Assembly: GCF_006345805.1 (NCBI RefSeq)
Contig: NC_042999.1
Coordinates: 8,680,001 to 8,744,000 of the forward strand
Direction: 5' to 3'
Length of the DNA: 64,000 bases
Source: Octopus sinensis
Taxonomy: Eukaryota
The position numbers and the translations under genes were made by a program. Every line of letters starts with the position of its first letter. Position 1 is the first letter of the stretch. Shown piece by piece: positions 1,676-64,000 of this stretch. The notes below the pieces were generated by a model. It was not told where the DNA came from and did not search any database. It worked only from the letters and a program-made list of their open reading frames with translations.

Positions 1676-2091
1676 GGCGGCGAGCTGGCCGAAAGGTTAG
1701 CGCGCCGGGCGAAATGCTTAGCGCTATTTCGTCTGTCGTTACGTTCTGAGTTCAAATTTCGCCGAGGTCGACTTTGCCTTTCATCCTTTCGGGATCGATA
1801 AATTTAGTACCAGTTACGCACTGGGGTCGATGTGATCGACTTAATGTCTATGCCTGTCCTTGTTTGTCCCCTCTATGTTTAGCCCCTTGTGGCTAATAAA
1901 GGAATAGATCTTTCGTCTGTCGTTACGGTTTTGAGTTCAATTCCGCCGAGGTCGACTTTGCCTTTCCATCCTTTCGGGGTCGATAAATTAAGTACCAGTT
2001 ACGCACTGGGGTCGATGTAATCGACTTAATCCGTTTGTCTGCCCTTGTTTGTCCCCTCGGTGTTTAGCCCCTTGTGGGTAGTAAAGAAATA
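1676..2091 (+). mobile_element. tRNA-derived SINE family A, dimer
   Basis: Head GGCGGCGAGCTGGC with B box GTTCAAATT. Central GGTCGACTTTGCCTTTCATCCTTTCGGGGTCGATAAATTAAGTACCAG resembles the Meta/Sauria-SINE-type domain (inference). Tail GCCCCTTGTGGGTAGTAAAGAAATA. Two units. Confidence 0.9.
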
Positions 2092-2540
2092 TATCGCTAC
2101 AACAGATTCGTTTCCAATTCTTCTAGACCACGCGAGGAGATTTCCTTTCAACACCGACCTTCATCTTTCTATAATCTTCACTTCGTCTCATTCCATAAAC
2201 CTAACTCGAAACACAAAGATCTGAAACCTTTTATTGTTTCTCCTGAGTATCAGGAATTATTTTAGAAGCCATTGCTTGTCATTGGCCAATTTTAAATAAT
2301 ATGTTTTCGAAAAGGATTTAGCTTCATGTTTCTGGATTTGTATAAAACAAAAATTCATTCTTGATTCAGAGAATTGTGGAATTCGGAGAAACTGGTGATG
2401 ATCTAAACCACAAATAAGGAATCCATGAAGAATTTGGTAAGTTAATATTTCTATGAGGAGTGAAGAATGTAAAGTTTCAAATACGTGCTCCTCGTCTGGG
2501 TTGGAAAAATGATATGGAATACAGAGTTGTGACTGCTGTT

Positions 2541-4297: not shown

Positions 4298-6180
4298 GGC
4301 GGCGAGCTGGCAGAAACGTTAGTACGCTGGGCGAAATGCTTATCGGTATTTCGTCCGCCACTGCGTTCTGAGTTCAAATTCTGCCGAGGTCGACTTTGCC
4401 TTTCATCCTTTCGTAGTCGATTAAAAAAGTACCAGTTACGCCCTGGGGTCGATATAATCGACCTAATCCCTTTGTCTGTCCTTGTTTGTCCTCTCTGTGT
4501 TTAGCCCCTTGTGGGTAGTACAGAAATAAGAAACGATAGCACGCTGGGCGAAATGCTTATCGGTATTTCGTCCGCCACTGCGTTCTGAGTTCAAATTCTG
4601 CCGAGGTTGACTTTGCCTTTCATCCTTTCAGGGTCGATTAAAAAAGTACCAGTTACGCACTGGGGTCGATATAATCGACCTAATCCCTTTGTCTGTCCTT
4701 GTTTGTCCTCTCTGTGTTTAGCCCCTTGTGGGTAGTACAGAAATAAGAAACGATAGCACGCTGGGCGAAATGCTTATCGGTATTTCGCCCGCCACTGCGT
4801 TCTGAGTTCAAATTCTGCCGAGGTCGACTTTGCCTTTCATCCTTTCAGGGTCGATTAAAAAAGTACCAGTTACGCACTGGGGTCGATATAATCGACCTAA
4901 TCCCTTGTCTGTCCTTGTTTGTCCTCTCTCTTGTTTAGCCCCTTGTGGGTAGTACAGAAATAAAACGATAGCACGCTGGGCGAAATGCTTATCGGTATTT
5001 CGTCCGCCACTGCGTTCTGAGTTCAAATTCTGCCGAGGTCGACTTTGCCTTTCATCCTTTCAGGGTCGATTAAAAAAGTACCAATTACGCACTGGGGTCG
5101 ATATAATCGACCTAATCCCTTTGTCTGTCCTTGTTTGTCCTCTCTGGGTTTAGCCCCTTGTGGTAGTACAGAAATAAGAACGATAGCATGCTGGGCGAAA
5201 TGCTTATCGGTATTTCGTCCGCCACTGCGTTCTGAGTTCAAATTCTGCCGAGGTTCGACTTTGCCTTTCATCCTTTCAGGGTCGATTAAAAAGTACCAGT
5301 TACGCACTGGGTCGATATAATCGACCTAATCCCTTTGTCTGTCCTTGTTGTTCCTCTCTGTGTTTAGCCCCTTGTGGGTAGTACAGAAATAAGAAACGAT
5401 AGCACCCGCGAAATGCGCGGCGTCGAAATGCTTAGCGGTTCGTCCGCCACTGCTTTCTGAGTTCAAATTCTGCCGAGGTCGACTTTGCCTTTCATCCTTT
5501 CAGGGTCGATTAAAAAAAGTACCAGTTACGCACTGGGGTCGATATATCGACTTAATCCCTTTGTCTGTCCTTGTTTGTCCTCTCTGTGTTTAGCCCCTTG
5601 TGAGCAGTACAGAAATAAGAAACGATAGCACGCCGGGCGAAATGCTTAGCGGTATTTCGTCCGCCACTGCGTTCTGAGTTCAAATTCTGCCGAGGTCGAC
5701 TTTGCCTTTCATCCTTTCAGGGTCGATTAAAAAAGTACCAGTTACGCACTGGGGTCGATATAATCGACTTAATCCCTTTGTCTGTCCTTGTTTGTCCTCT
5801 CTGTGTTTAGCCCCTTGTAGGTAGTAAAGAAATATGTATTTCGTCCGCCACTGCGTTCCGAGTTCAAATTCTGCCGAGGTCGACTTTGCCTTTCATCCTT
5901 TCAGGGTCGATTAAAAAAGTACCAGTTACGCACTGGGGTCGATATAATCGACTTAATCCATGTGTCTATCCTTGTTTGTCCTCTCTGTGTTTAGCTCCTT
6001 CTGGGTAGTACAGAAATAGGTATTTCGTCCATCCTTACGTTCTGAGTTCAAATTCCGCCGAGGCTGACTTTGTCTTTCATTCTTTTGGGGTCGATGAAAT
6101 AAGTACCAGTTGATCACTAAGATCGATGTAGTTGACTAACTCCGAAATTAATAGCTTTCTACCAAAATCTGAAACCGATA
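4298..6180 (+). mobile_element. Head-to-tail concatemer of SINE family A (~9 units, ~215-225 bp then ~180 bp)
   Basis: Unit starts (AAACGATAGCAC) near 4531, 4748, 4963, 5178, 5394, 5620, then shorter units. Only the first unit has a full head. Confidence 0.92.
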
Positions 6181-8679: not shown

Positions 8680-10349
8680 TATTATAGGTACAAAGCCGGA
8701 GGTTTTTTTGGTGAGGGAGAGAACTAGTCGATTACATCGACTCCAGAATTTCACTGGTACTTAATTTATCGATCCCGAAAGGATAGAAAGCAAAGCCGAC
8801 CTCGGCGGAATTTGAACTCAGAACGTAGCAAGGGACGAAATACCTATTTCTTTACAACCCACAAGGGGCTAAACATAGAGGGGACAGACAAACGGATTAA
8901 GTCGATTACATCGACCCCAGTGTGTAACTGGTACTTATTTAATCGACCCCGAAACGATGAAAAGCAAAGCCGACCTCGGCGGAATTTGAACTCAGAACGT
9001 AGCGGCAGACAAAATACCTATTTCTTTACTACCCACAAGGGGCTAAACACAGAGGGGACAAACAAGGACAGAAAAACGGATTAAGTCGATTATATCGACC
9101 CCAGTGCGTAACTGGTACTTATTTAATCGACCCCGAAAGGAGGAAAGGCGAAGTCGACCTCTGCGGAATTTGAACTCGGAACGTAGCGGCAGACGAAATA
9201 CCTATTTCTTTACTACCCACAAGGGGCTAAACCCAGAGAAGACAAACAAGGACATACAAATGGATTAATTTGATTATATCGACCCGGTGCGTAACTGGTA
9301 CTTAATTTATCGACCCCGAAAGGATGAAAGGCAAAGTCGACCTCGGCGGAATTTGAACTCAGAACGTAGCGGCAGACGAAATACCTATTTCTTTACTACC
9401 CACAAGGGGCTAAACACAGAGAAGACAAACAAGGACAGAAAAACGGATTAAGTCGATTATATCGACCCCAGTGCGTAACTGGTACTTATTTAATCGACCC
9501 CGAAAGGAGGAAAGGCGAAGTCGACCTCTGCGGAATTTGAACTCGGAACGTAGCGGCAGACGAAATACCTATTTCTTTACTACCCACAAAGGGCTAAACA
9601 CAGAGAAGACAAACAGGGACATACAAATGGATTAATTTGATTATATCGACCTGGTGCGTAACTGGTACTTATTTAATCGACCCCGAAAGGATGAAAGGCA
9701 AATCGACCTCGGCGGAATTTGAACTCAGAACGTAGCAACAGGCGAAATACCTATTTCTTTACTACCCACAAGGGGCTAAACACAGAGAAGACAAACAAGG
9801 ACATACAAATGGATTAATTTGATTATATCGACCCGGTGCGTAACTGGTACTTATTTAATCGACCCCGAAAGGATGAAAGGCAAAGTCGACCTCGGCGGAA
9901 TTTGAACTCAGAACGTAGCGGCAGACGAAATACCTATTTCTTTACTACCCACAAGGGGCTAAACACAGAGAAGACAAACAAGGACAGACAAACGGATTAA
10001 GTCGATTATATCGACCCCAGTGCGTAACTGGTAGTTATTTAATCGACCCCAAAATGATGAAAGGCAAAGTCGACCTCGGCGAAATTTGAACTCGGAACGT
10101 AGCGGCAGACAAAATACCTATTTCTTTACTACCCACAAGGGGCTAAACACAGAGAGGACAAACAAGGACAGACAAACGGATTAAGTCGATTATATCGACC
10201 TCAGTGTGTAACTGGTGCTTATTTAATCGACCCCGAAAGGATGAAAGGCAAAGTCGACCTCGGCGGAATTTGAACCCAGAACGTAACGGCAGACGAAATA
10301 CCACTAAGCATTTCGCCCGGCCTGCTAACGATTCTGCCACCTCGCCGCC
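8680..10349 (-). mobile_element. Head-to-tail concatemer of SINE family A (~9 units, ~180 bp)
   Basis: Repeated GACGAAATACCTATTTCTTTACTACCCACAAGGGGCTAAAC junctions. Full head at the 10349 end. Confidence 0.92.
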
Positions 10350-14214: not shown

Positions 14215-14813
14215 GGTGGCGAGCTGGCTGAACCGTTAGCACGCCGGGCGAAATGCTTAGCGGTATTTCGTCTGCGTTACGTTGTGAGTTCAAATTCCGC
14301 CGAGGTCGACTTTGCCTTTCATACTTTCGGGGTCTATAAATTAAGTACCAGTTACGCACTGGGGTCGATGTAATCGACTTAATACCTATGTCTGTCCTTG
14401 TTTGTCCCCTCTGTGTTTAGCCCCTTGTGGGTAATAAAGAAATAGGTATTTCGTCTGCTGCTACGTTCTGAGGTCAAATTCCGCTGAGGTCGACTTTGCC
14501 TTTCATCCTTTCGAGGTCGATTAAATAAGTACCAGTTACGCACTGGGGTCGATGTAATCGGCTTAATCCATTTGCTTGTCCTTGTTTGTCCCCTCTGTGT
14601 TTACCACCCCCTTGTGGGTAGTAAAGAAATAGGCATTTCGTCTGCCGCTACGTTGTGTTCCGCCGAGGTTGCCTTTGCCTTTCATCATTTTCGGGGTCGA
14701 TTAAATAAGTACCAGTTGCACACTGGAGTTGATGTAATCGACTTAATCCGTTTGTCTGTACTTGTTTGTCCCTTCTATGTTTAGCACCACCCCCCATGAA
14801 CAATAAAGAAATA
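14215..14813 (+). mobile_element. SINE family A trimer nested in an opposite-strand family A tail
   Basis: Three units. Flanks AATAATGGTTTCAAA and AATAATGATTTAAAA form an imperfect TSD. Confidence 0.85.
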
Positions 14814-26689: not shown

Positions 26690-27565
26690 CCTGATATCAT
26701 GTATGATGTATAACAAATATATAACAGGATATCATGTATGATATATAATAAATATATAAGAGGATATCATGTATGATATATAATAAATATATAAGAGGAT
26801 ATCATGTATGATATATAATAAATATATAACAGGATATCATGTATAATATATAATAAATATATAATAGGATAATATGTATGGTATATAATAAATATATAAT
26901 AGGATAATATGTATGGTATATAATAAATATATAACAGGATATCATGTATGGTATATAATAAATATATAACAGGATATCATGTATAATATATAATAAATAT
27001 ATAATAGGATAATATGTATGGTATATAATAAATATATAAGAGGATATCATGTATGTATATAATAAATATATAACAGGATATCATGTATGATATATAACAA
27101 ATATATAACAGGATATCATGTATATATATAATAAATATATATAGGATAATATGTATGGTATATAATAAATTATAACAGGATATCATGTATGGTATATAAT
27201 AAATATATAACAGGATATCATGTATAATATATAATAAATATATAATAGGATAATATGTATGGTATATAATAAATATATAAGAGGATATCATGTATGGTAT
27301 ATAATAAATATATAACAGGATATCATGTATGATATATAACAAATATATAACAGGATATCATGTATAATATATAATAAATATATAATAGGATAATATGTAT
27401 GATATAATAAATATATAACAGGATATCATGTATGATATAATAAATATATAACAGGATATCATGTATGGTATATATCATGTATGGTATATAATAAATATAT
27501 AACAGGATATCATGTATGATATATAACAAATATATAACAGGATATCATGTATGATATATAATAAA
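26690..27565. repeat. 35-bp AT-rich minisatellite (~25 units)
   Basis: AGGATATCATGTATGATATATAATAAATATATAA(C/G). AGGAT recurs at 26761 and 26796. Confidence 0.95.
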
Positions 27566-27854
27566 TTCACCAGACCACATACTGTGTCTACTTAGCTAAT
27601 TCTTAGCTAATGTTAGCATCACCAACCAAGTGAGACAGATCACAGAGCAACCTGATCGTTGGGTTGGCTTTTAGCAGAAACTACTTGGATCGCAAGCAAT
27701 GACCTAATTTTGCTGTTTCTTCTTTACTTGGAACGGAAACCCGTCAGCTGCTGTAAAAAGACACCAAATTCCTTCATTTAACGAAGACATAACAACGTAA
27801 GTATTGATTCTTATAACAGTTTAGGTTGCCTTTCTTTTTGGCCAGTGAAGGTAA

Positions 27855-30117: not shown

Positions 30118-30429
30118 CGGTAAGCTTTATGAAAATAGACAAAAGACGAAGGCAGGTTTACGGAAATAAACAAAAGACGAAGGCAGGTGGAATACAAACA
30201 AACAATTGTATTAGTATGGCGCTCAGGAAATATAAATGAAACAAGTCTTTAACGTTCCGAGCCTACGCTCTTCAACAGAAAGATACACAGAGAAAAAAAA
30301 CACAGAAAGAAGGAGAGAAAAAATATATGCCTGCAAAAGCTAGCGAATCAACATGGCGATCTGATTTCGGCCAGAAGTCAAAGATCAAACATGAGACGCA
30401 AGAGCGAAATTAGGGGAGATAATAGGGTT
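30110..30429 (-). repeat. pLTR, 3' copy (hammerhead GAAA mutated to GGAA)
   Basis: Nearly identical to 34384-34704. Plus strand reads AACGTTCCGAGCC instead of AACGTTTCGAGCC. Confidence 0.92.
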
Positions 30430-30934
30430 GAATGACCCCCGCTCAAACATAAGAGTGTGTGTGTGTGTGTGTGTGTGTGTATGAGAAGAGTGTGTGTGTG
30501 TGTATGAGAGAGTATTAGTGCGTATGAGAGGTCTAGACGTGTGTATGTATATATGATGTGATGTGTAAAGTCGTATGGTGTAGTGTAGAGAGAGGAGAAG
30601 AGGGGGGAGGTAAGGGGAGATGGGGTGAGGGGGAGATGGGAGGGGTGAGGGGGAGAAAAAAGGGGAGAAGAAGAGGGGGAAGGGGAGGGGAGAGAAGGAA
30701 GGAGAGGAGAAAAGGAGGGGAGGGGAGGAGGGAGGATAGAGGGAGAGGGGAGAGAGAGAGAAGGGGAGTGAGGGAGCAGAGGGAGCAGAGGGAAGGGGAA
30801 GAGGGAAGAAGGAGGGAGGGAGAAAGAGGGAAGAAGGGAAGAGGAGTAGGGGTGAAAGGATAAAGGGCTGAAGAGAAGTAGGGGTCGGGGGGAGGTTAGA
30901 TGAGGAGGGGGGAGAGGGGGTTAGATGAGGAGGG

Positions 30935-31420
30935 GGGAGAGTTGAGACCAAATGACATATAACAGCGAAGAGAGAAGATTAATTCCTGTTCACGGCGCAA
31001 ACGGGAATCCGGATAGCCTCTGTGTAAGGACAAACCGAACACAGACAGGTGTTGCTAGGAGTGACCGGTGGAGCGGAAATGGCGTGAAACCGGTGTGTCG
31101 TTCGCAAGGTGGATGTCACGAAGGTGTTCCGCGAACCGGTCAGCCAAGCGGCGTCCCGTTTGTCCGATGTACAGGGAATGGCAGAGAGAGCAAGAGACGC
31201 AATAGATAATATTGCTGGAGGTGCAGGTGATGATGCGAAAGGGTCGATGATGGGTGCCAGTGAGGAGGGTGGTGTTGGAGAGGTAAGGGCAAGTGCGGCA
31301 ACGTGGGCGGGAGCAGGGGAACGAGCCAGGTTGGGAGGTAGGGTCAGGGAAGGAGCTATGGACCAAAAGGTCTCGAAGGTAATGGGCTCGTTTGAAAGAG
31401 GGGAGGGGTCGGTTAGGGAA
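30935..31420 (-). pseudogene. GIY-YIG endonuclease domain of the PLE
   Basis: CRTCPY...CTSSNIIYCVSCSLCHSLYIGQTGRRLADRFAEHLRDI...VSRHFRSTGHS, then frameshifted RLRREQELIFSL...GLN. Confidence 0.93.
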
Positions 31421-33720
31421 GAGGTGTGAAGTGGACGGGTCGGACTGGAGATGACGGAAAGCTCGAAGAATGGTGCGTTGGAGAGGTAGGGTCGTGGGTT
31501 GGTAAGTGAGGGGAAAATGGAGGCGGGAGACTACAGGGCGGGTTCGGGGAGAGAGAGCAGATACACGGTCCACGGAAGTGCTCTGGCAAGGGCGGTGTGG
31601 ATAGTGGTGAGGGGGTATCCACGTAGGATGAAGTGGTGAGCCATACGTTGAGACTGAGTCCTAAAGTCATGGTCGTCACTACAGAGCCTACGTAGACGGA
31701 GGAATTGGGAATAGGGGATGGAAAGCTTGGTGTGTTCTGGGTGGGAGGAAGAGAAGTTGAGGTAAGAGTGTGAGTCTGTGTGTTTGTAGTGAATGGAGGT
31801 GGTAAGAGTGGAGTGAAGAATGCTAACCGAAATGTCGAGGAAGGAGACAGAGGTGTAGGAGATAGTGGAAGTGAAGTGGAGGGCTGGATGGAAAGATTGA
31901 ACAAAAGAGAGGAGGGAATCTAGATGTTCACGGGAGAGTGAGGTGGCACCGATAATGTCGTCAATGTAACGACCATATAGTTCAGGAGTGGGACCAGTGA
32001 AATTAGAGAATATTTGGGCCTCAACATAGCCAACGAACAGGTTCGCATAGTTGGGGCCCATTCACGTTCCCATGGCCACTCCTGAGACCTAATGGTAGAA
32101 CTCGCCCGTGAACGAGAAGCAGTTAAGAGTAAGGACAAGTTCGGCCAGACGAATGAGTGTGGAGGTGTCAGGTTCAGGGTTGGAGCGGAGGTCAAGAAAG
32201 TGTTGAAGTGCCTGCAGTCCTTCGTGGTGAGGGATAACGGTATAGAGGCTCTGAATGTCCATATTAAAAAGGATTTTGGAGGAGCCGTGAGGAAAGGAGA
32301 AAGAGTTGAAAAGCCGGAGAGCATGGTTGGTATCGTGGATGTGGGAGGGAAGAGATGCCACTAGGGGGCAAGGACACGGTCGAGGTATTTAGAGATGAGC
32401 TCCGTGGGGCAGTTACAGGCGGAGACGATGGGGCGGCCAGGGTTGTTGGGCTTGTGGATTTTGGGGAGGAAGTAAATGGTGGGGGTACGTGGGGTTCGCA
32501 CAATTAGATTGGATGCGGTGTGGGGGAGACGGGAGGACGAGATAAGGTCGCGGACAGTAGAGAATACCGTCTGTTGGTAGCTACGTGTAGGGTTAGAGGA
32601 CAGAGGGGAGTAGAAGGAGGTGTCATTGAGTTGGCGGAAAGCCTCGGCCCTGTAGAGGTCCGCGCCCCACACCACTACAGCTCCACCTTTGTCAGCCGGT
32701 TTGATGATAATGTCAGCGCGCCGTTGGAGGGAACGAAGAGCCGAGAGCTCAGCCGGGGAGATGTTGAGGTGGCGTTGGCGCCTGGAGAACTTGAACCGCT
32801 CCAATGCACGCTGACAAGCGCCCGCGAAAAGATCCACTGCTAGGAACTGGCCGGGGGCAGGCGTCCACGGGGATGGTCGGCGGCCCAGGTCAGTGAAGCA
32901 GTCCTCTTCGTTGGATGTGGGTGGTGAGTCGTGGTAATGCGCACCCAACCGGACGCGGCGCACAAAGCTGTGGACATCAACTCGCGTCTGGAATTCCTTA
33001 CAGGATGGAGTGAGGGGAATGAAACGCAGACCCCTACTAAGGACGGAGCGTTCCGCCGCAGAGAGGGGAAGATCGGGGGGAATGGTAACAACAGACGGAA
33101 GTGGAGAAGGGGTGGGTGGAATAGAAGTAGGACGGGTGGTAGGGCTCGTGGAGGTCTGAGGGGGAGGGATTGGGGAGGTGTGTGGGGGTGGTTGGGAAGG
33201 GCAGTAGGGTTAGGTGTAGGTGGAGGGAGCCTATCAGGAGGGGAGAAGGGGTTGTTGGGTGGGGCAGTGGGGTTAGGTGTGGGTGGATGGAGCCTATCGG
33301 GAGGGGAGAAGGGTAGTGGAGGAGTTGGGGTGGTGGCGTCGGGTGTGGTGGAATGGAGGAGTGATTGGAGTTTACGAAGTTTGGTATCGGAAAGAAATTG
33401 ATGGAAGAGGTGGTTCAAATGGATAATGAAGCGTAGCGTGTTTGGAGCATAGAAAGGCGGCAGAGAGGAGAAAAACGTGAGGAAAGCAGGAGGAAGAAGG
33501 CGGTTGATGGTATGTAGTTTAGAGAGATTGGAGCGAATGGTGGCCCGCATAAGGCGGTAAGATGTGGTGCGGAGTATGGATAAGATGGAAGAATCCGAGT
33601 GGAGAGCAGGGTGGAAGTGGAGGCGGAAACCTTTAGGGATGAGTCGGTGATGTAGGCAGCGGCTTAGGAAAGAGACATGGCTAGAGAAACGGGTTTTTTT
33701 TAAAGAAGTAGAGAGAGATT
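31421..33720 (-). pseudogene. PLE N-terminal and reverse transcriptase domains, several frameshifts
   Basis: HVSFLSRCLHHRLIPKGF, IIIKPADKGGAVVVW, IYFLPKIHKPNNPGRPIVS, MDIQSLYTVIPH, MGPNYANLFVG, YGRYIDDI, SFLDI, IHYKHTDSHSYL. Confidence 0.95.
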
Positions 33721-37929: not shown

Positions 37930-38532
37930 CTATAGCAGTGAGCTGGCAGACATGTTAGCACGCCGGGCGAAATGCTTATCCGTATTTCGTCTGCCGCTAC
38001 GTTTTGAGTTCAAATTCCGCCGAGGTCGACTTTGCCTTTCATCCTTTCGGGGTCGATAAATTAAGTACCAGTTACGCACTGGGGTCGATATAATCGACTT
38101 AATCCGTCTGTCTGTCCTTGTTTGTCCTCTCTGTGTTTAGCCCCTTGTGGGTAGTAAAGAAATAGGTATTTCGTCTGCCGCTACGTTTTGAGTTCAAATT
38201 CCGCCGAGGTTGACTGTGCCTTTCATCCTTTCGGGGTCGATTAAATAAGTACCAGTTACGCACTGAGGTCGATATAATCGACTTAATCCGTTTGTCTGTC
38301 GTTGTTTGTCCTCTCTGTGTTTAGCCCCTTGTGGGTAGTAAAGAAATAGGTATTTTGTCTGCCGCTACGTTCTGAGTTCAAATTCCGCCGAGCTCGAATT
38401 TGCCTTTCATCCTTTCGGGGTCGATTAAATAACTTCCAGTTATGCACTGGTGTCTATTTAATCGACTTAATCCATTTATCTCTCCTTGTTTGCCCCCTCT
38501 GTGTTTAGCCCCCTGTGGACAATAAAGAAATA
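37930..38532 (+). mobile_element. SINE family A trimer with 13-bp TSD
   Basis: TSD TATATTATTCTAA at 37917-37929 and 38533-38545. Confidence 0.9.
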
Positions 38533-43557: not shown

Positions 43558-45256
43558 GGACGTCGGTTGTTATTTTTGAACATAAAGAAATAGGTTGTTA
43601 TTTTTGAACGCTCGTGAAATTGTGTAAAAAAGAAGAAAAAGTAAGTTGGAAAATTGTTGTTGAATTTTGTTGTACGTTTGTTGATACGGTTTCGTGTTAT
43701 ACTGTTTCTGTTTTGGCGGCCGTTGTCTGTCTGTGTGAGACAGACAAGAGGATATGGATGACCCCTCTCTGATGGAAGAGTCGGAGGAGGAATGGTTGTT
43801 CGAGACCTTGTCGGAGGCATCGACCTCTGAGGACAAGCTGACCGGCGCTGTGAATAATATTAAAACCGGGAAGACGTACGCGGGAGCTGCAAAAAAGAAG
43901 ACGACGGAGGAAAAGGAGATAAACCTAGAAAAATTACCAGGTTTTCAAGCTTACATAACTAAAGCAGGTGGTGAGGTAAAACTACTTCCACCAGAGAAAC
44001 GAGAAGAATGGTTTATGAAGAGGATTATAAAATACCGGACATATGGAAAGGATAACAGGAAAGTAGAAATAATAAAAATGGAAGATATTGAGGGGGCGCT
44101 GAGAAGAGAGAAGGAAGAAATCACATTCATGACGAGAGGAAACGAGTTCGGAACTATAAGAGTGCAGTTCGAAAGCAAAAATATAGCAAGGAAAATGGCA
44201 ACGAAGACAATAAAAACTGAAAAAGTAATATTGTTACCATCCTCCATGAACCAAAGAATAAATAGAATAAGAGTTGAAGGGATGCCCCCCACATAGAGGG
44301 TGAATGGGTTGTCGCGGCGATTATAAAAGATGTGGAAGAAGAGACGGACATTTTACAAGCGACCGTAAAAAATGAAGGTTTACGCTAGAAATGAGCGTTC
44401 AAGCAGAGGAGGGTGCACTGGAGAAGATGGCGGACAGCATAATTTTAGGGAATTTAGTAATGAGAGTGTGGGTGGAGGGCAGAGCACCAAGGTGCTATAA
44501 GTGTGGCCTGAGGGGCCACATAGGAGCCTACTGCTCTCCCCCACAAAAAGAAACAGTGATCCATGAAGATGAGGAGACGGAGCGGGAAAAATTTGAGGAG
44601 GAAGAATCTGAGGAGGAGAAGGAGGCCCAAACTGAGTGGGAAGACGTAAGGAAAAAAAGAAAAAGAAGAAGGAAAGTGAACTTTATCGAACCCCAATCCA
44701 CCCAAATACCACCCGCACCCTCTGAGCCCCATCCTTCCCCTGCAAACAAAGATCCCACCCACTCCCCGCCTACAAGAAAACCTAAAAACGCAGACATACA
44801 GAGTAAACAAGAGCCCAAGTCCCATTTTTTATGTTTTGTAAAAAAAAAAGGAAGACAATGAGAACACAACAAGACGCTTTGGTAAAGAAGCATGGCATGA
44901 GGAAGAAGATGGGAGTTACTTGGTGGTGGAAGGGGAAGTAATGGACATAAGGAAGATGTGTGTAAATGAGGGCGTAAAAGCGATTGAGGTGGAATTTTCG
45001 AATGAGAAGATAAAAGAGTATGAAAGGATATTTGAGAAAGTGATAAGAAAAGAGGGACTTTTGATTGAAGATGATAGGTGACGAAGGGTTGTGAAGGACA
45101 GGTAAGTGGTGCTGGCAGATGGGGCCCTCAGCATCGCTTTCATATTATCACTATCATTCTAAAAATTCATTCTCCATACTATTAATTATAATGTTCTATG
45201 TTCCCAATGTCTTGTGGTGTCCCCTCTGTGTCGCCCCTAGTGGGTAATAAAGAAAG
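43558..45256 (+). mobile_element. ORF1-only Tx1/L1-like non-autonomous retroelement with 14-bp TSD
   Basis: TSD AGAAAATATTTTGA at 43544-43557 and 45257-45270. 5' leader, ORF1, short 3' UTR ending GTGGGTAATAAAGAAAG. No ORF2. Confidence 0.8.
43754..45113 (+). pseudogene. Gag-like ORF1 (putative RRM region + CCHC zinc knuckle), disrupted
   Basis: TYAGAAKK motif, GTIRVQFES...IRVEGMPP, and VWVEGRAPRCYKCGLRGHIGAYC (Cx2Cx4Hx4C). Stop at ~44296 and frameshift at ~44850. Confidence 0.85.
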
Positions 45257-61359: not shown

Positions 61360-61404
<45 letters not shown>

Positions 61405-61407
<3 letters not shown>

Positions 61408-61777
61408 TAAGTAACTGGAGTTTAACGCAGGTGTAAATCAAATATTTTTACTTTCGACACATGTTTCGAAAATTCCACTGATACTATTCAAAAGAATAAA
61501 TGGTATAAACAATGCAATCTTCTCCTCAGCTACTTATGACGTTATATCATATAACGTTTTTTTAAACAATATTATAGCGTTCTGTCTATCGCTATACAAA
61601 TTCATCATTTTTTGCTAAATTTGACTTATTGACGCGTTTCGCTTTTTTCACTTTCCTGAGAAGATTGCATTGTTTATACCATTTATACTTTTGAATAGTA
61701 TCAGTGGAATTTTCGAAACATGTGTCGAAAGTAAAAATATTTGATTTACACCTGCGTTAAACTCCATTTATTTATTC
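61405..61777. mobile_element. Head-to-head inverted pLTR-like pair (120-bp arms) with extended-stem-II hammerhead
   Basis: 61405-61524 mirrors 61658-61777. Minus arm: CUGAGGA-GAAGAUU...AAUUUUC-GAAA-CAUGU-GUC/GAAAGU. Confidence 0.75.
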
Positions 61778-61834
61778 ATATATATTTATGTTATGGTTAA
61801 AATTGATTTTGGGAGGCTGCTGCTGCTGCTTTCT

Positions 61835-61848
61835 GTGTATATATAGCG
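61835..61848 (+). promoter_or_regulatory. TATA-like box ~30-40 bp upstream of the Rep-like ATG
   Basis: GTGTATATATAGCG preceded by GGGAGGCTGCTGCTGCTG. ATG at 61877. Confidence 0.4.
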
Positions 61849-61876
61849 TGAATTCTGGTTTACTACTACAGTCAAG

Positions 61877-61984
61877 ATGCCTCACCATCCACGATACACC
61901 AGATTCTGCTTTACACTTAACAACTACGACGATGTCGACGTTTATAGACTTCAGCATATGGAGCATATTCGTTATATAATTTTC
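61877..61984 (+). pseudogene. rep: Endogenous CRESS-DNA (circo/nanovirus-like) Rep N-terminal fragment
   Basis: MPHHPRYTRFCFTLNNYDDVDVYRLQHMEHIRYIIF. RCR motif I (F/W)CFTLNN(Y/P) within 20 aa of the start, then YIIF 15 aa later, where Reps have the Y(I/L)(I/V)(F/V)G.E strand before motif II. Truncated there. Confidence 0.72.
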
Positions 61985-62084
61985 GAAAATTTTCACCAAA
62001 CAATTTTTAGAAAATTTTTGCCGAAAATTTTACCCAAAAATTTTTCAAACATTTTCATTGAAAATTGTCGCCAAAAATTTTTTG
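61978..62084. repeat. AT-rich ~11-13-bp repeats with palindromic GAAAATTTTC (block 1)
   Basis: GAAAATTTTCACC, GAAAATTTTTGCC, GAAAATTTTACCC, AAAAATTTTTC. Confidence 0.85.
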
Positions 62085-62290
62085 AGATCAAAGAGGGTGC
62101 CGACAGAGATCAAAGAGGGCGCCGACAGAGATCAAAGAGGGTGCCGACAGAGATCAAAGAGGAGTTTTGGCAGAGATCAATGAGGGTGCCGACAGAGATC
62201 AAAGAGGAGTTTTGACAGAGTTCAAAGAGGAGTTTTGACGGAGATCAAAGAGGGTGCAGACAGTGATCAAAGAGGGCGCCGATAGAGATC
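62085..62290 (+). repeat. 22-bp repeat array, short arm (plus orientation)
   Basis: GAGATCAAAGAGGG(T/C)GCCGACA, about 9 units including 23-bp GAGGAGTTTTGACA variants. Confidence 0.92.
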
Positions 62291-62295
62291 TCTCC

Positions 62296-62412
62296 CAGAA
62301 AATTTTCAGTAATTGTCACCTAAGATTTTACCTGAAAATTATTCGAAAATTTTCACCGAAAATTTTACCCAAAAATTTTCACCGATATTTTTCGAAAATT
62401 TTCACAATCTTT
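62296..62412. repeat. AT-rich GAAAATTTTC repeats (block 2), spacer between inverted arrays
   Basis: Shares CCGAAAATTTTACCCAAAAATTTT with block 1 in direct orientation. Confidence 0.85.
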
Positions 62413-62417
62413 GATAC

Positions 62418-64000
62418 TAGTCGGCACCATCTTTGATTTCTGTCAGCACCCGCTTTGACCTCTTTCGGCGCCCTCTTTGATCTCTGTCGGCGCCCTCTTT
62501 GATCTCTGTCGGCACCCTCTTTGATCTCTGTCGGCGCCCTCTTTGATCTCTGTCGGCACCCTCTTTGATCTCTGTCGGCGCCCTCTTTGATCTCTGTCGG
62601 CACCCTCTTTGATCTCTGTCGGCAGGCTCTTTGATCTCTGTCGACACCCTCTTTGATCTCTGTCGACACCCTCCTTGATCTCTGTCGGCACCCTCTTTGA
62701 TCTCTGTCGGCGCCCTCTTTGATCTCTGTCGGCACCCTCTTTGATCTCTCTCGGCGCCCTCTTTGATCTCTGTAGGCACCCTCTTTGATCTCTGTCGGCG
62801 CCCTCTTTGATCTCGGTCGGCACCCTCTTTGATCTCTGTCGGCGCCCTCTTTGATCTCTGTCGGCACGCCTTTTGATCTCTGTCGGCGCCCTCTTTGATC
62901 TCTGTCGGCACCCTCTTTGATCTCTGTCGGCGCCCTCTTTGATCTCTGTCGGCACCCTCTTTGATCACTGTCGGCACCCTCTTTGATCTCTGTCGGCACC
63001 CTCTTTGATCTCTGTCGACACCCCCTTGATCTCTGTCGGCGCCCTCTTTGATCTCTGTCGGCACCCTCTTTGATCTCTGTCGACACCCTCTTTGATCTAT
63101 GTCGGCGCCTCTTTGATCTCTGTCGGCACCCTCTTTGATCTATGTCGGCGCCCTCTTTGATCTCTGTCGGCACCCTCTTTGATCTCTGTCGGCGCCCTCT
63201 TTGATCTCTGTCGGCGCCCTCTTTGATCTCTGTCGGCACCCTCTTTGATCTCTCTCGGCGCCCTCTTTCATCTCTGTCGGCGCACTCTTTGATCTCTGTC
63301 GGCACCCTCTTTGATCTCTGTCGGCGCCCTCTTTGATCTCTGTCGACACCCTCCTTGATCTCTGTCGGCACCCTCTTTGATCTCTGTCAAAACTCCTCTT
63401 TGATCTCTGTCGGCGCCCTCTTTGATCTCTGTCGACACCCTCTTTGATCTCTGTCGGCGCCCTCTTTGATCTCTGTCGGCACCCTCTTTGATCTCTGTCG
63501 GCGCCCTCTTTGATCTCTGTCGGCGCACTCTTTGATCTCTGTCGGCACCCTCTTTGATCTCTGTCGGCGCCCTCTTTGATCTCTGTCGGCACCCTCTTTG
63601 ATCTCTGTCGGCGCCCTCTTTGATCTCTGTCGGCACCCTCTTTGATCTCTGTCGGCGCCCTCTTTGATCTCTGTCGGCACCCTCTTTGATCTCTGTCGGC
63701 AGGCTCTTTGATCTCTGTCGGCACCCTCTTTGATCTCTGTCGACACCCTCCTTGATCTCTGTCGGCACCCACTTTGATCTCTGTCGGCGCCCTCTTTGAT
63801 CTCTGTCGGCACCCTCTTTGATCTCTGTCGGCGCCCTCTTTGATCTCTGTCGGCACCCTCTTTGATCTATGTCGGCGCCCTCTTTGATCTCTGTCGGCAC
63901 CCTCTTTGATCTATGTCGGCGCCCTCTTTGATCTCTGTCGGCACCCTCTTGATCTATGTCGGCGCCCTCTTTGATCTCTGTCGGCACCCTCTTTGATCTA
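62418..64000 (-). repeat. 22-bp GC-rich tandem array, long arm (opposite orientation), ~70 units, runs off the window
   Basis: TTGATCTCTGTCGGC(A/G)CCCTCT with A/G alternation (44-bp dimer). The 66-bp cycle explains the PTEIKEGADRDQRGRRQRSKRV ORFs. Confidence 0.97.

What the first reader, a model, noticed from the sequence alone, without database searches (positions are those of the whole stretch)
61810..61984. Endogenous CRESS-DNA virus Rep start with its putative promoter
Sequence: TATA-like box, ATG, then RFCFTLNNY and YIIF at canonical spacing. Established: (F/W)xFTxNN is RCR motif I of circo-, nano- and related CRESS Reps. The ORF breaks just before motif II (HLQG) and continues in frame into the repeat blocks as a 112-aa chimera. 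A CRESS endogenous element in a cephalopod genome would be notable. Only 36 codons support the call, and no NANTATTAC origin is visible.
Basis: partly seen in the sequence, partly recalled or inferred. Interest (0 to 1): 0.85.

Follow-up and report, generated by a model that had tools for sequence, protein, structure and literature searches.

The report
Dead fragment of circovirus-like Rep gene
About 170 bases of this window are the fossil start of the replication gene of a small circular DNA virus that entered an animal genome; it can no longer do anything, and its value is as a record of an old infection.

Summary
At 61877-61984 (+) an ATG opens 36 codons that are the N-terminus, with rolling-circle motif I, of a CRESS-DNA virus Rep. 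The fragment alone is below Pfam's cut-off (Viral_Rep 15.1 bits, cut-off 26). A search of 1.84 billion proteins found two close relatives (74% and 64% identity, E 5e-11 and 2e-8).

Their contigs carry the rest of a circovirus-like element:
- an Arg-rich capsid-like ORF on the other strand;
- a stem-loop with the Circoviridae nonanucleotide on the capsid strand, as in cycloviruses;
- a CTG repeat and a TATA-like box;
- a Rep with motifs II and III that passes Pfam's cut-off and matches the solved porcine circovirus 2 Rep nuclease domain.

The window keeps only the CTG repeat, the TATA-like box, the leader and 36 codons (61816-61984). It has no origin, no capsid gene, no catalytic motifs and no helicase. 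The gene ends at AT-rich repeats and a 22-nt satellite, and the 112-aa ORF is a chance read-through.

The three copies differ mostly at synonymous sites (dN/dS about 0.1), which suggests separate integrations.

CRESS fossils are already reported in bivalves and gastropods, so this is a new member of a known kind. The cephalopod host could not be tested.

The parts
61816..61846 (+). Remnant of the viral intergenic region. It holds a short CTG repeat (61816-61829), which in the relatives lies next to the origin stem-loop, and a TATA-like box (61838-61846). This is the left edge of detectable homology.
   Evidence: Local alignment with the regions upstream of Rep in L001 and L004. The observed score was reached by 6 of 500 and 0 of 500 shuffles. 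Distances to the ATG are collinear in the three copies. The stem-loop and nonanucleotide of the relatives are absent here.
61877..61984 (+). Truncated Rep gene: the first 36 codons only, holding the N-terminal strand of the HUH endonuclease domain with motif I at 61904-61927. The retained part has no stop and no frameshift. Motifs II and III and the helicase are missing.
   Evidence: Pfam Viral_Rep, profile positions 2-29, E 0.028. P0002 is 74% identical (E 5e-11) and P0003 64% identical (E 1.8e-8). DNA identity to L001 is 78%. hhalign against bona fide Reps gave E 1.3e-5. It is the only Rep-like place in the window.
61877..62215 (+). The 112-aa chimeric ORF: 36 Rep codons followed by a translation of repeat DNA. 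It is probably not a gene.
   Evidence: ORF list. The tail overlaps the tandem repeats. The product is not on record in the gene-position index of public assemblies.
61984..62082 (.). AT-rich 13/37-nt repeats that replace Rep from codon 37 on. This is the right edge of the viral remnant.
   Evidence: Tandem Repeats Finder. A related block at 62311-62405 lies in inverted orientation (pairs I2 and I3). The Rep alignments end at 61975-61984.
62084..63999 (.). A 22-nt satellite in two opposed blocks: 62084-62290 in one orientation and 62408-63999 in the other. It runs to the end of the window and is a neighbour, not viral.
   Evidence: Tandem Repeats Finder: 9.3 and 72.5 copies, 83% and 91% matches. 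No match to the relatives' contigs.
61393..61789 (.). A 397-bp foldback with 132-nt arms (97% complementary) and a 133-nt spacer, ending 27 nt upstream of the viral remnant. It is a neighbour, not viral.
   Evidence: Inverted repeat I1. It is single-copy in the window and shows no similarity to L001 or L004.

Best explanation
This is a short, dead remnant of an endogenous circovirus-like (CRESS-DNA) element.

A small circular ssDNA virus had capsid and Rep genes diverging from a stem-loop origin. Presumably as its double-stranded replicative form, it was inserted into the germline of the host lineage. That integration route is inferred.

The copy in this window has since lost the origin, the capsid gene and everything in Rep after codon 36. 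What remains is part of the intergenic region (CTG repeat and TATA-like box), the leader and the first 36 codons with motif I.

The catalytic metal-binding motif II, the nicking tyrosine of motif III and the SF3 helicase are all absent. The piece therefore cannot nick, join or replicate DNA. The 112-aa ORF is a chance read-through into satellite DNA.

The window copy and the two related loci found elsewhere diverged mainly at synonymous sites. They most likely stem from separate integrations of related viruses rather than from duplication of one dead copy.
For: Shown:
- The fragment is homologous to Rep N-termini.
- The relatives are bona fide Viral_Rep members. One reading-frame piece of L001 scores 47.4 bits (E 2.4e-12) over profile positions 29-82, which complements the window's 2-29. 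P0003 scores 38.3 bits against a cut-off of 26.
- That L001 piece matches the solved porcine circovirus 2 Rep nuclease domain (2hw0, E 3e-9).
- The relatives have a stem-loop whose loop carries the Circoviridae nonanucleotide. [quoted passage not shown] The motif and the genus rule are given in PMC5656780.
- 60 IMG/VR viral contigs, 56 of them 1.9-2.4 kb long, encode the same N-terminus at up to 51% identity over residues 1-36.
- The window has no other Rep, capsid or origin sequence.
- The relatives are themselves degraded. L001-L003 are 99.8-100% identical across three sequencing runs and share the same broken frames.
- The left ends of the relatives' contigs are fragments of a host repeat family that occurs at least four times in this window.
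- Over the first 25 codons, pS is 0.66-0.84 and pN is 0.12-0.16 (Fisher p 8e-5 for window versus L001).

Inferred: the integration route, the order of the losses, and separate integrations.
Against: - The fragment alone is below Pfam's cut-off, and it has no significant match to a solved structure.
- Only 36 codons and about 30 nt of upstream similarity carry the call.
- Contiguity with host DNA rests on the assembly alone.
- The organism behind the relatives' runs (SRR11869385, SRR11869390, SRR11869391) and the organism behind the window could not be named.
- The capsid-like ORF of the relatives has no Pfam or PDB match.
- The dN/dS estimate rests on 25 codons with near-saturated synonymous sites.
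Confidence: 0.88

Rival explanations
1. Assembly artefact: reads of an exogenous circular virus, or of a contaminant, were joined by mistake to host repeats, so nothing is integrated here.
For: No reads could be inspected. Both flanks of the fragment are repeats, where assemblers do err.
Against: Only about 170 nt are viral, and they lack the origin that lies between the two conserved upstream motifs and the capsid side in the relatives. A misjoined viral read would normally bring intact, longer viral sequence. The closest relatives are themselves degraded and end in host-type repeats.
Confidence: 0.05
2. The fragment is the first exon, or a small expressed ORF, of a host gene co-opted from Rep. 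One form of this would be a Rep N-terminus fused to a repeat-encoded tail.
For: The 36 codons are free of stops. The ORF stays open for 112 aa. The upstream TATA-like box is conserved in position.
Against: - No splice-donor-like site lies at the end of homology.
- The tail is satellite DNA that is open in every frame.
- The catalytic motifs are missing.
- The product is not on record in the gene-position index of public assemblies.
- 36 open codons are unremarkable.
Confidence: 0.04
3. Chance resemblance of a short host sequence to motif I.
For: The Pfam score is below the cut-off. Motif I is short.
Against: E 5e-11 and 1.8e-8 against 1.84 billion proteins. 78% DNA identity over 101 nt, starting exactly at the ATG of a Rep gene. 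The upstream motifs are collinear.
Confidence: 0.01
4. The window copy is not a separate integration. It is a piece of one old insertion that was copied or moved within the genome, for example along with neighbouring repeats.
For: It is flanked by a foldback and a satellite, which can mobilise or rearrange neighbouring DNA. Only 25 codons support the selection argument.
Against: Synonymous sites are near saturation while amino acids are conserved (dN/dS about 0.1). This is not expected if the copies diverged as dead DNA. There is no similarity outside the viral part.
Confidence: 0.12

Closest known systems
Endogenous circoviral elements (CVe) and 'CRESS-DNA group' endogenous elements in animal genomes (Dennis et al. 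2018, PMC6069186; Liu et al. 2011, cited there)
   Same: Rep-derived, fragmentary and non-functional DNA embedded in host repeats. Multiple copies occur per host. Elements of this kind are already recorded in molluscs: two bivalves and two gastropods are listed in the table read.
   Different: No cephalopod is in that list, and no paper on cephalopod CRESS elements was found. The window copy is far shorter than most reported elements. The host of this window is unverified.
Genus Cyclovirus, family Circoviridae (ICTV profile, PMC5656780)
   Same: In the relatives L001 and L004, capsid-like and Rep ORFs diverge from a stem-loop whose loop carries the family's nonanucleotide. That motif lies on the capsid-coding strand, which is the feature that separates Cyclovirus from Circovirus. 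The contig L001 is 1.77 kb long, inside the 1.7-2.1 kb genome range.
   Different: - Membership was not tested by phylogeny.
- Rep identity to the nearest database proteins is only 41-45%.
- The capsid-like ORF has no match to any capsid family.
- The window copy retains none of these genome features.
Porcine circovirus 2 Rep, nuclease domain (PDB 2hw0, 5xor, 6wdz, 7lar)
   Same: It is the best solved-structure match of the relatives' Rep piece, which covers motifs II and III (E 3e-9 to 9e-8). The profile of the N-termini hits the motif-I strand of the same chains, weakly (E 0.19-2.1).
   Different: The window fragment alone gives no significant PDB match. It covers roughly the first third of that domain and has no catalytic residue.

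Membership tests
CRESS-DNA virus Rep (Pfam Viral_Rep PF02407, HUH endonuclease) | Motif I near the N-terminus | tested here: met
   Pfam alignment to profile positions 2-29. hhalign to motif I of bona fide Reps, E 1.3e-5.
CRESS-DNA virus Rep (Pfam Viral_Rep PF02407, HUH endonuclease) | Score at or above Pfam's gathering cut-off (26 bits) | tested here: not met
   The window fragment scores 15.1 bits. Its relatives score 38.3 and 47.4 bits. The fragment is therefore homologous to family members but is too short to qualify alone.
CRESS-DNA virus Rep (Pfam Viral_Rep PF02407, HUH endonuclease) | Motif II (metal-binding histidines) and motif III (nicking tyrosine) | tested here: not met
   Absent from the window. 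Rep similarity ends at 61984, and no other Rep-like stretch exists in any frame. Both motifs are present in the relatives.
CRESS-DNA virus Rep (Pfam Viral_Rep PF02407, HUH endonuclease) | C-terminal SF3 helicase domain | tested here: not met
   Nothing in the window. In L001 only a helicase-looking piece was seen by eye, without a Pfam hit.
Circoviridae-type genome (ICTV profile PMC5656780) | [quoted passage not shown] | tested here: not met
   Window: no motif within one mismatch near the start, and no stem. Relatives: present. L004 has a 9-bp stem and a 12-nt loop, and the L001 stem is imperfect.
Circoviridae-type genome (ICTV profile PMC5656780) | Capsid gene on the complementary strand | tested here: not met
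   Window: tblastx with L001 and L004 finds nothing upstream. Relatives: an Arg-rich ORF in the right place and orientation, but with no Pfam or PDB match, so its identity as a capsid gene is inferred.
Circoviridae-type genome (ICTV profile PMC5656780) | Phylogenetic placement of Rep inside the family | not tested
   Only broken pieces are available, and they were not joined. The nearest database proteins are 41-45% identical.
Endogenous viral element | Physical continuity with host DNA | tested here: inconclusive
   The fragment is continuous with host-type repeats in the assembled 64-kb window. Reads were not available.
Endogenous viral element | Loss of coding integrity | tested here: met
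   Window: Rep is truncated once, and the capsid gene and origin are missing. Relatives: Rep is broken by frameshifts and stops, at least three breaks in L001 and at least three in L004.
Endogenous viral element | Same locus in several individuals or species | not testable with these tools
   The source genome is not in the indexed collections. For the relative L001 the same broken locus appears in three runs.

The most novel reading that the evidence does not exclude
If the window is indeed from a cephalopod, this fragment and the two related loci found in public reads would be the first trace of a distinct, cyclovirus-like lineage of circular ssDNA viruses in cephalopods. That lineage would have entered the germline of this host group several times. 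This would make cephalopods, or a close associate of theirs, a real past host of such viruses.
Probability: 0.4. Interest if true: 0.5.

Novelty: new member of a known kind. Interest (0 to 1): 0.35.

Why it matters
Hosts of most cyclovirus-like and other CRESS-DNA viruses are unknown, because nearly all of them come from metagenomes. Germline fossils are among the few direct host records. A family of such fossils with origin, capsid-like and Rep parts still recognisable in some copies gives several things: a host anchor, a minimum age once orthologous loci are compared, and a marker for annotating the repeat-rich genome it lies in. The fragment in this window has no likely function.

Tried and rejected
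- The word-indexed protein search with the 41-aa fragment and with P0003 found nothing new. With the second Rep piece of L001 it found only three distant Reps.
- PDB phmmer with the fragment found nothing. The profile of the N-termini gave only weak Rep hits mixed with unrelated ones.
- P0001, the top hit, is a 2,848-aa tandem-repeat ORF whose score is the sum of 40 weak matches, about 3 bits each. I rejected it as evidence. P0004 looked to me like translated sequencing adaptor (recognised by eye, not tested with a tool), and I rejected it too.
- I looked for a degraded origin in the window. MAFFT placed 61796-61808 under the relatives' loop, but the local alignment with shuffles supports only 61818-61846, and the stretch does not fold. 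I rejected this.
- I looked for capsid or further Rep pieces anywhere in the window and found none.
- I tried to name the host. Thirteen window ORFs are absent from the protein collection, Rfam gave no hit, and the run accessions do not appear in the paper library.
- Pfam on eight other window ORFs gave nothing.

Disclosure: one search printed contig L001 (1.77 kb) in full before I knew that it was a degraded virus-derived element. After that I worked on pieces only, and I fetched IMG/VR matches with zero flank.

Full report
**1. The observation**

The sequence at 61810-61984 reads as the first-stage reader said.
- A CTG repeat lies at 61816-61829.
- A TATA-like string lies at 61838-61846.
- The ATG is at 61877.
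- 36 codons follow, with a motif-I-like block at residues 10-17 (61904-61927) and a hydrophobic strand ending at 61984.
- The frame then stays open to 62215, giving 112 aa. From 61984 on it translates AT-rich 13/37-nt repeats and a 22-nt tandem array.

**2. Is it more than chance?**

- Pfam gives a single family for the fragment, Viral_Rep (PF02407). The hit covers profile positions 2-29 of 82, at E 0.028 and 15.1 bits, below the cut-off of 26.
- The Protein Data Bank gives nothing for the fragment alone.
- The word-indexed protein search found no candidate.
- The exhaustive phmmer search of 1.84 billion representatives settled the question. P0002 (78 aa) is 74% identical at E 5e-11, and P0003 (104 aa) is 64% identical at E 1.8e-8. 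P0005 is a clear Rep nuclease domain at E 3.6e-4.
- The nominal top hit, P0001, is a tandem-repeat ORF whose score sums 40 weak matches. P0004 looked to me like translated adaptor (recognised by eye, not tested). I discount both.
- A profile of the three close N-termini aligns to the N-terminal motif I of a profile built from four proteins that each carry a Pfam Viral_Rep hit (hhalign E 1.3e-5, probability 81%).

**3. What the relatives are**

P0002 and P0003 are encoded on short assemblies of public sequencing runs. L001-L003 are about 1.77 kb and come from three runs. L004 is 913 bp.

The window at 61877-61977 is 78% identical in DNA to the start of the Rep ORF of L001, and the match begins exactly at the ATG.

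These contigs hold what the window lacks:
- On the opposite strand, starting near the Rep start, lies an ORF with an arginine-rich N-terminus. It is conserved between L001 and L004. It has no Pfam or PDB match, so calling it a capsid gene is an inference from its place, orientation and composition.
- Between the two gene starts lies a stem-loop whose loop carries the nonanucleotide that the ICTV profile gives for Circoviridae. It reads on the strand of the capsid-like ORF (PMC5656780). That placement is the stated hallmark of the genus Cyclovirus as against Circovirus.
- Next come a CTG repeat, a TATA-like box and the Rep ATG.
- Rep itself is broken in both contigs by frameshifts and stops, at least three breaks in each.
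- One reading-frame piece of L001 scores 47.4 bits on Viral_Rep over profile positions 29-82 (E 2.4e-12). This is the exact complement of the window's positions 2-29. P0003 scores 38.3 bits.
- The same L001 piece matches the solved nuclease domain of porcine circovirus 2 Rep (2hw0, E 3e-9).
- In IMG/VR, 60 viral contigs encode the same N-terminus at up to 51% identity over residues 1-36, and 56 of them are 1.9-2.4 kb long. Only the matched pieces were fetched.

**4. Are the relatives integrated?**

- L001-L003 are 99.8-100% identical over their whole length in three runs, broken frames included.
- The left ends of L001 and L004 are fragments of a repeat family that occurs in this window at about 13188, 37446, 46197 and 58186. 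They are 86-90% identical over 30-36 nt and lie in opposite orientations in the two contigs.

This points to degraded copies sitting in a genome with the same repeat family as the window, that is, the same host or a related one. I could not name the organism of those runs.

**5. What is left in the window**

- Upstream of the ATG, only 61818-61846 aligns with the relatives: the CTG repeat through the TATA-like box. The observed score was reached by 6 of 500 and 0 of 500 shuffles.
- The two motifs stand 57-60 and 37 nt before the ATG in the window, against 62-63 and 41 nt in both relatives. TATA-like strings are common here (130 in the window), so the collinearity is the evidence, not the box itself.
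- The stem-loop and nonanucleotide are gone.
- No capsid-like and no further Rep-like sequence exists anywhere in the 64 kb.
- On the right, Rep similarity ends at 61975-61984, where the AT-rich repeats begin.
- On the left, a 397-bp foldback (61393-61789, 132-nt arms, 97% complementary) ends 27 nt before the remnant.
- The viral remnant is therefore 61816-61984, about 170 nt.
- The satellite runs to the end of the window. Whether more of Rep lies beyond it cannot be seen.

**6. How it works**

It does not work. The piece lacks motif II, motif III and the helicase, so it can neither nick nor replicate DNA. It also has no origin to act on. The 112-aa ORF owes its length to satellite DNA that is open in all frames, where spurious ORFs reach 330 aa. 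Its product is not on record in the gene-position index of public assemblies. No splice-donor-like site marks the end of homology.

The history I infer has two stages. First, a circovirus-like genome was integrated into the germline. Then it decayed, losing its left part (origin and capsid gene) and having its right part cut off by, or replaced with, repeat DNA.

**7. One insertion or several?**

Over the first 25 codons, which are gap-free in all three copies, the proportion of synonymous differences is 0.66-0.84 and that of non-synonymous differences is 0.12-0.16. For the window against L001, Fisher's p is 8e-5. Most of the divergence between the copies therefore arose while the protein was under selection, which means in viruses and before each copy died. 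This favours separate integrations of related viruses. The sample is small, so I hold the inference loosely.

**8. Comparison with what is known**

Rep-derived fossils of circoviruses, cycloviruses and the wider CRESS-DNA group are well known in animal genomes. A screen of 675 animal genomes listed CRESS-group elements in two bivalves and two gastropods, and no cephalopod (PMC6069186). I found no paper on such elements in cephalopods.

The window fragment is homologous to Rep but is not a member by Pfam's own test. It fails every other defining feature of a Rep or of a circovirus-type genome. The element family it belongs to, as seen in L001 and L004, works like a cyclovirus-type genome. Membership in that genus was not tested by phylogeny.

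**9. Host**

The window is repeat-rich eukaryotic DNA.
- It has SINE-like 184-nt units in tandem arrays and many microsatellites.
- By eye only, it has retroelement-looking ORFs, without Pfam support.
That is memory, not a test.

**10. Verdict**

In itself the feature is an ordinary dead fragment. Its interest lies in the host record and in the better-preserved relatives it led to. I rate it a new member of a known kind, with interest 0.35.

Noticed in passing
window 61393-61789: A 397-bp foldback with two 132-nt arms (97% complementary) and a 133-nt spacer. It is TA-rich on both sides and single-copy in the window. It may be a miniature inverted-repeat element.
   Followed up: partly
window 61984-63999: A 22-nt satellite in two opposed blocks (62084-62290 and 62408-63999), separated and preceded by AT-rich 13/37-nt repeats, in a foldback-like layout. 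It is open in all frames and so yields spurious ORFs of up to 330 aa.
   Followed up: partly
window 1727-2095, 4312-6111, 8726-10302, 14262-14785, 37982-38532: A SINE-like unit of about 184 nt arranged in tandem arrays of 2 to 8 copies, in both orientations.
   Followed up: no
window about 13188, 37446, 46197 (minus strand), 58186; L001 1-30; L004 1-36: A second dispersed repeat family. Fragments of it form the left ends of the two relatives' contigs, which links those contigs to a genome with the same repeats.
   Followed up: partly
window 30385-33550 (minus strand) and 43754-44861 (plus strand): A GC-rich block with strong GC skew, carrying retroelement-looking ORFs. Further on lies a gag-like ORF with a CCHC knuckle. 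None had a Pfam hit at E up to 0.01.
   Followed up: partly
window 26693-27566: An AT-rich satellite of 35-nt period with about 23 copies.
   Followed up: no
P0001 (ENA contig of 10.5 kb): A 2,848-aa ORF made of about 40 tandem units of some 71 aa. Each unit weakly resembles the Rep N-terminus, and the high score is an effect of repetition. Whether the satellite derives from a Rep fragment is open.
   Followed up: no
L001 (two places inside the Rep region): A 31-nt direct repeat, 97% identical, inside the degraded Rep of the relative. It hints at an internal duplication or insertion.
   Followed up: no
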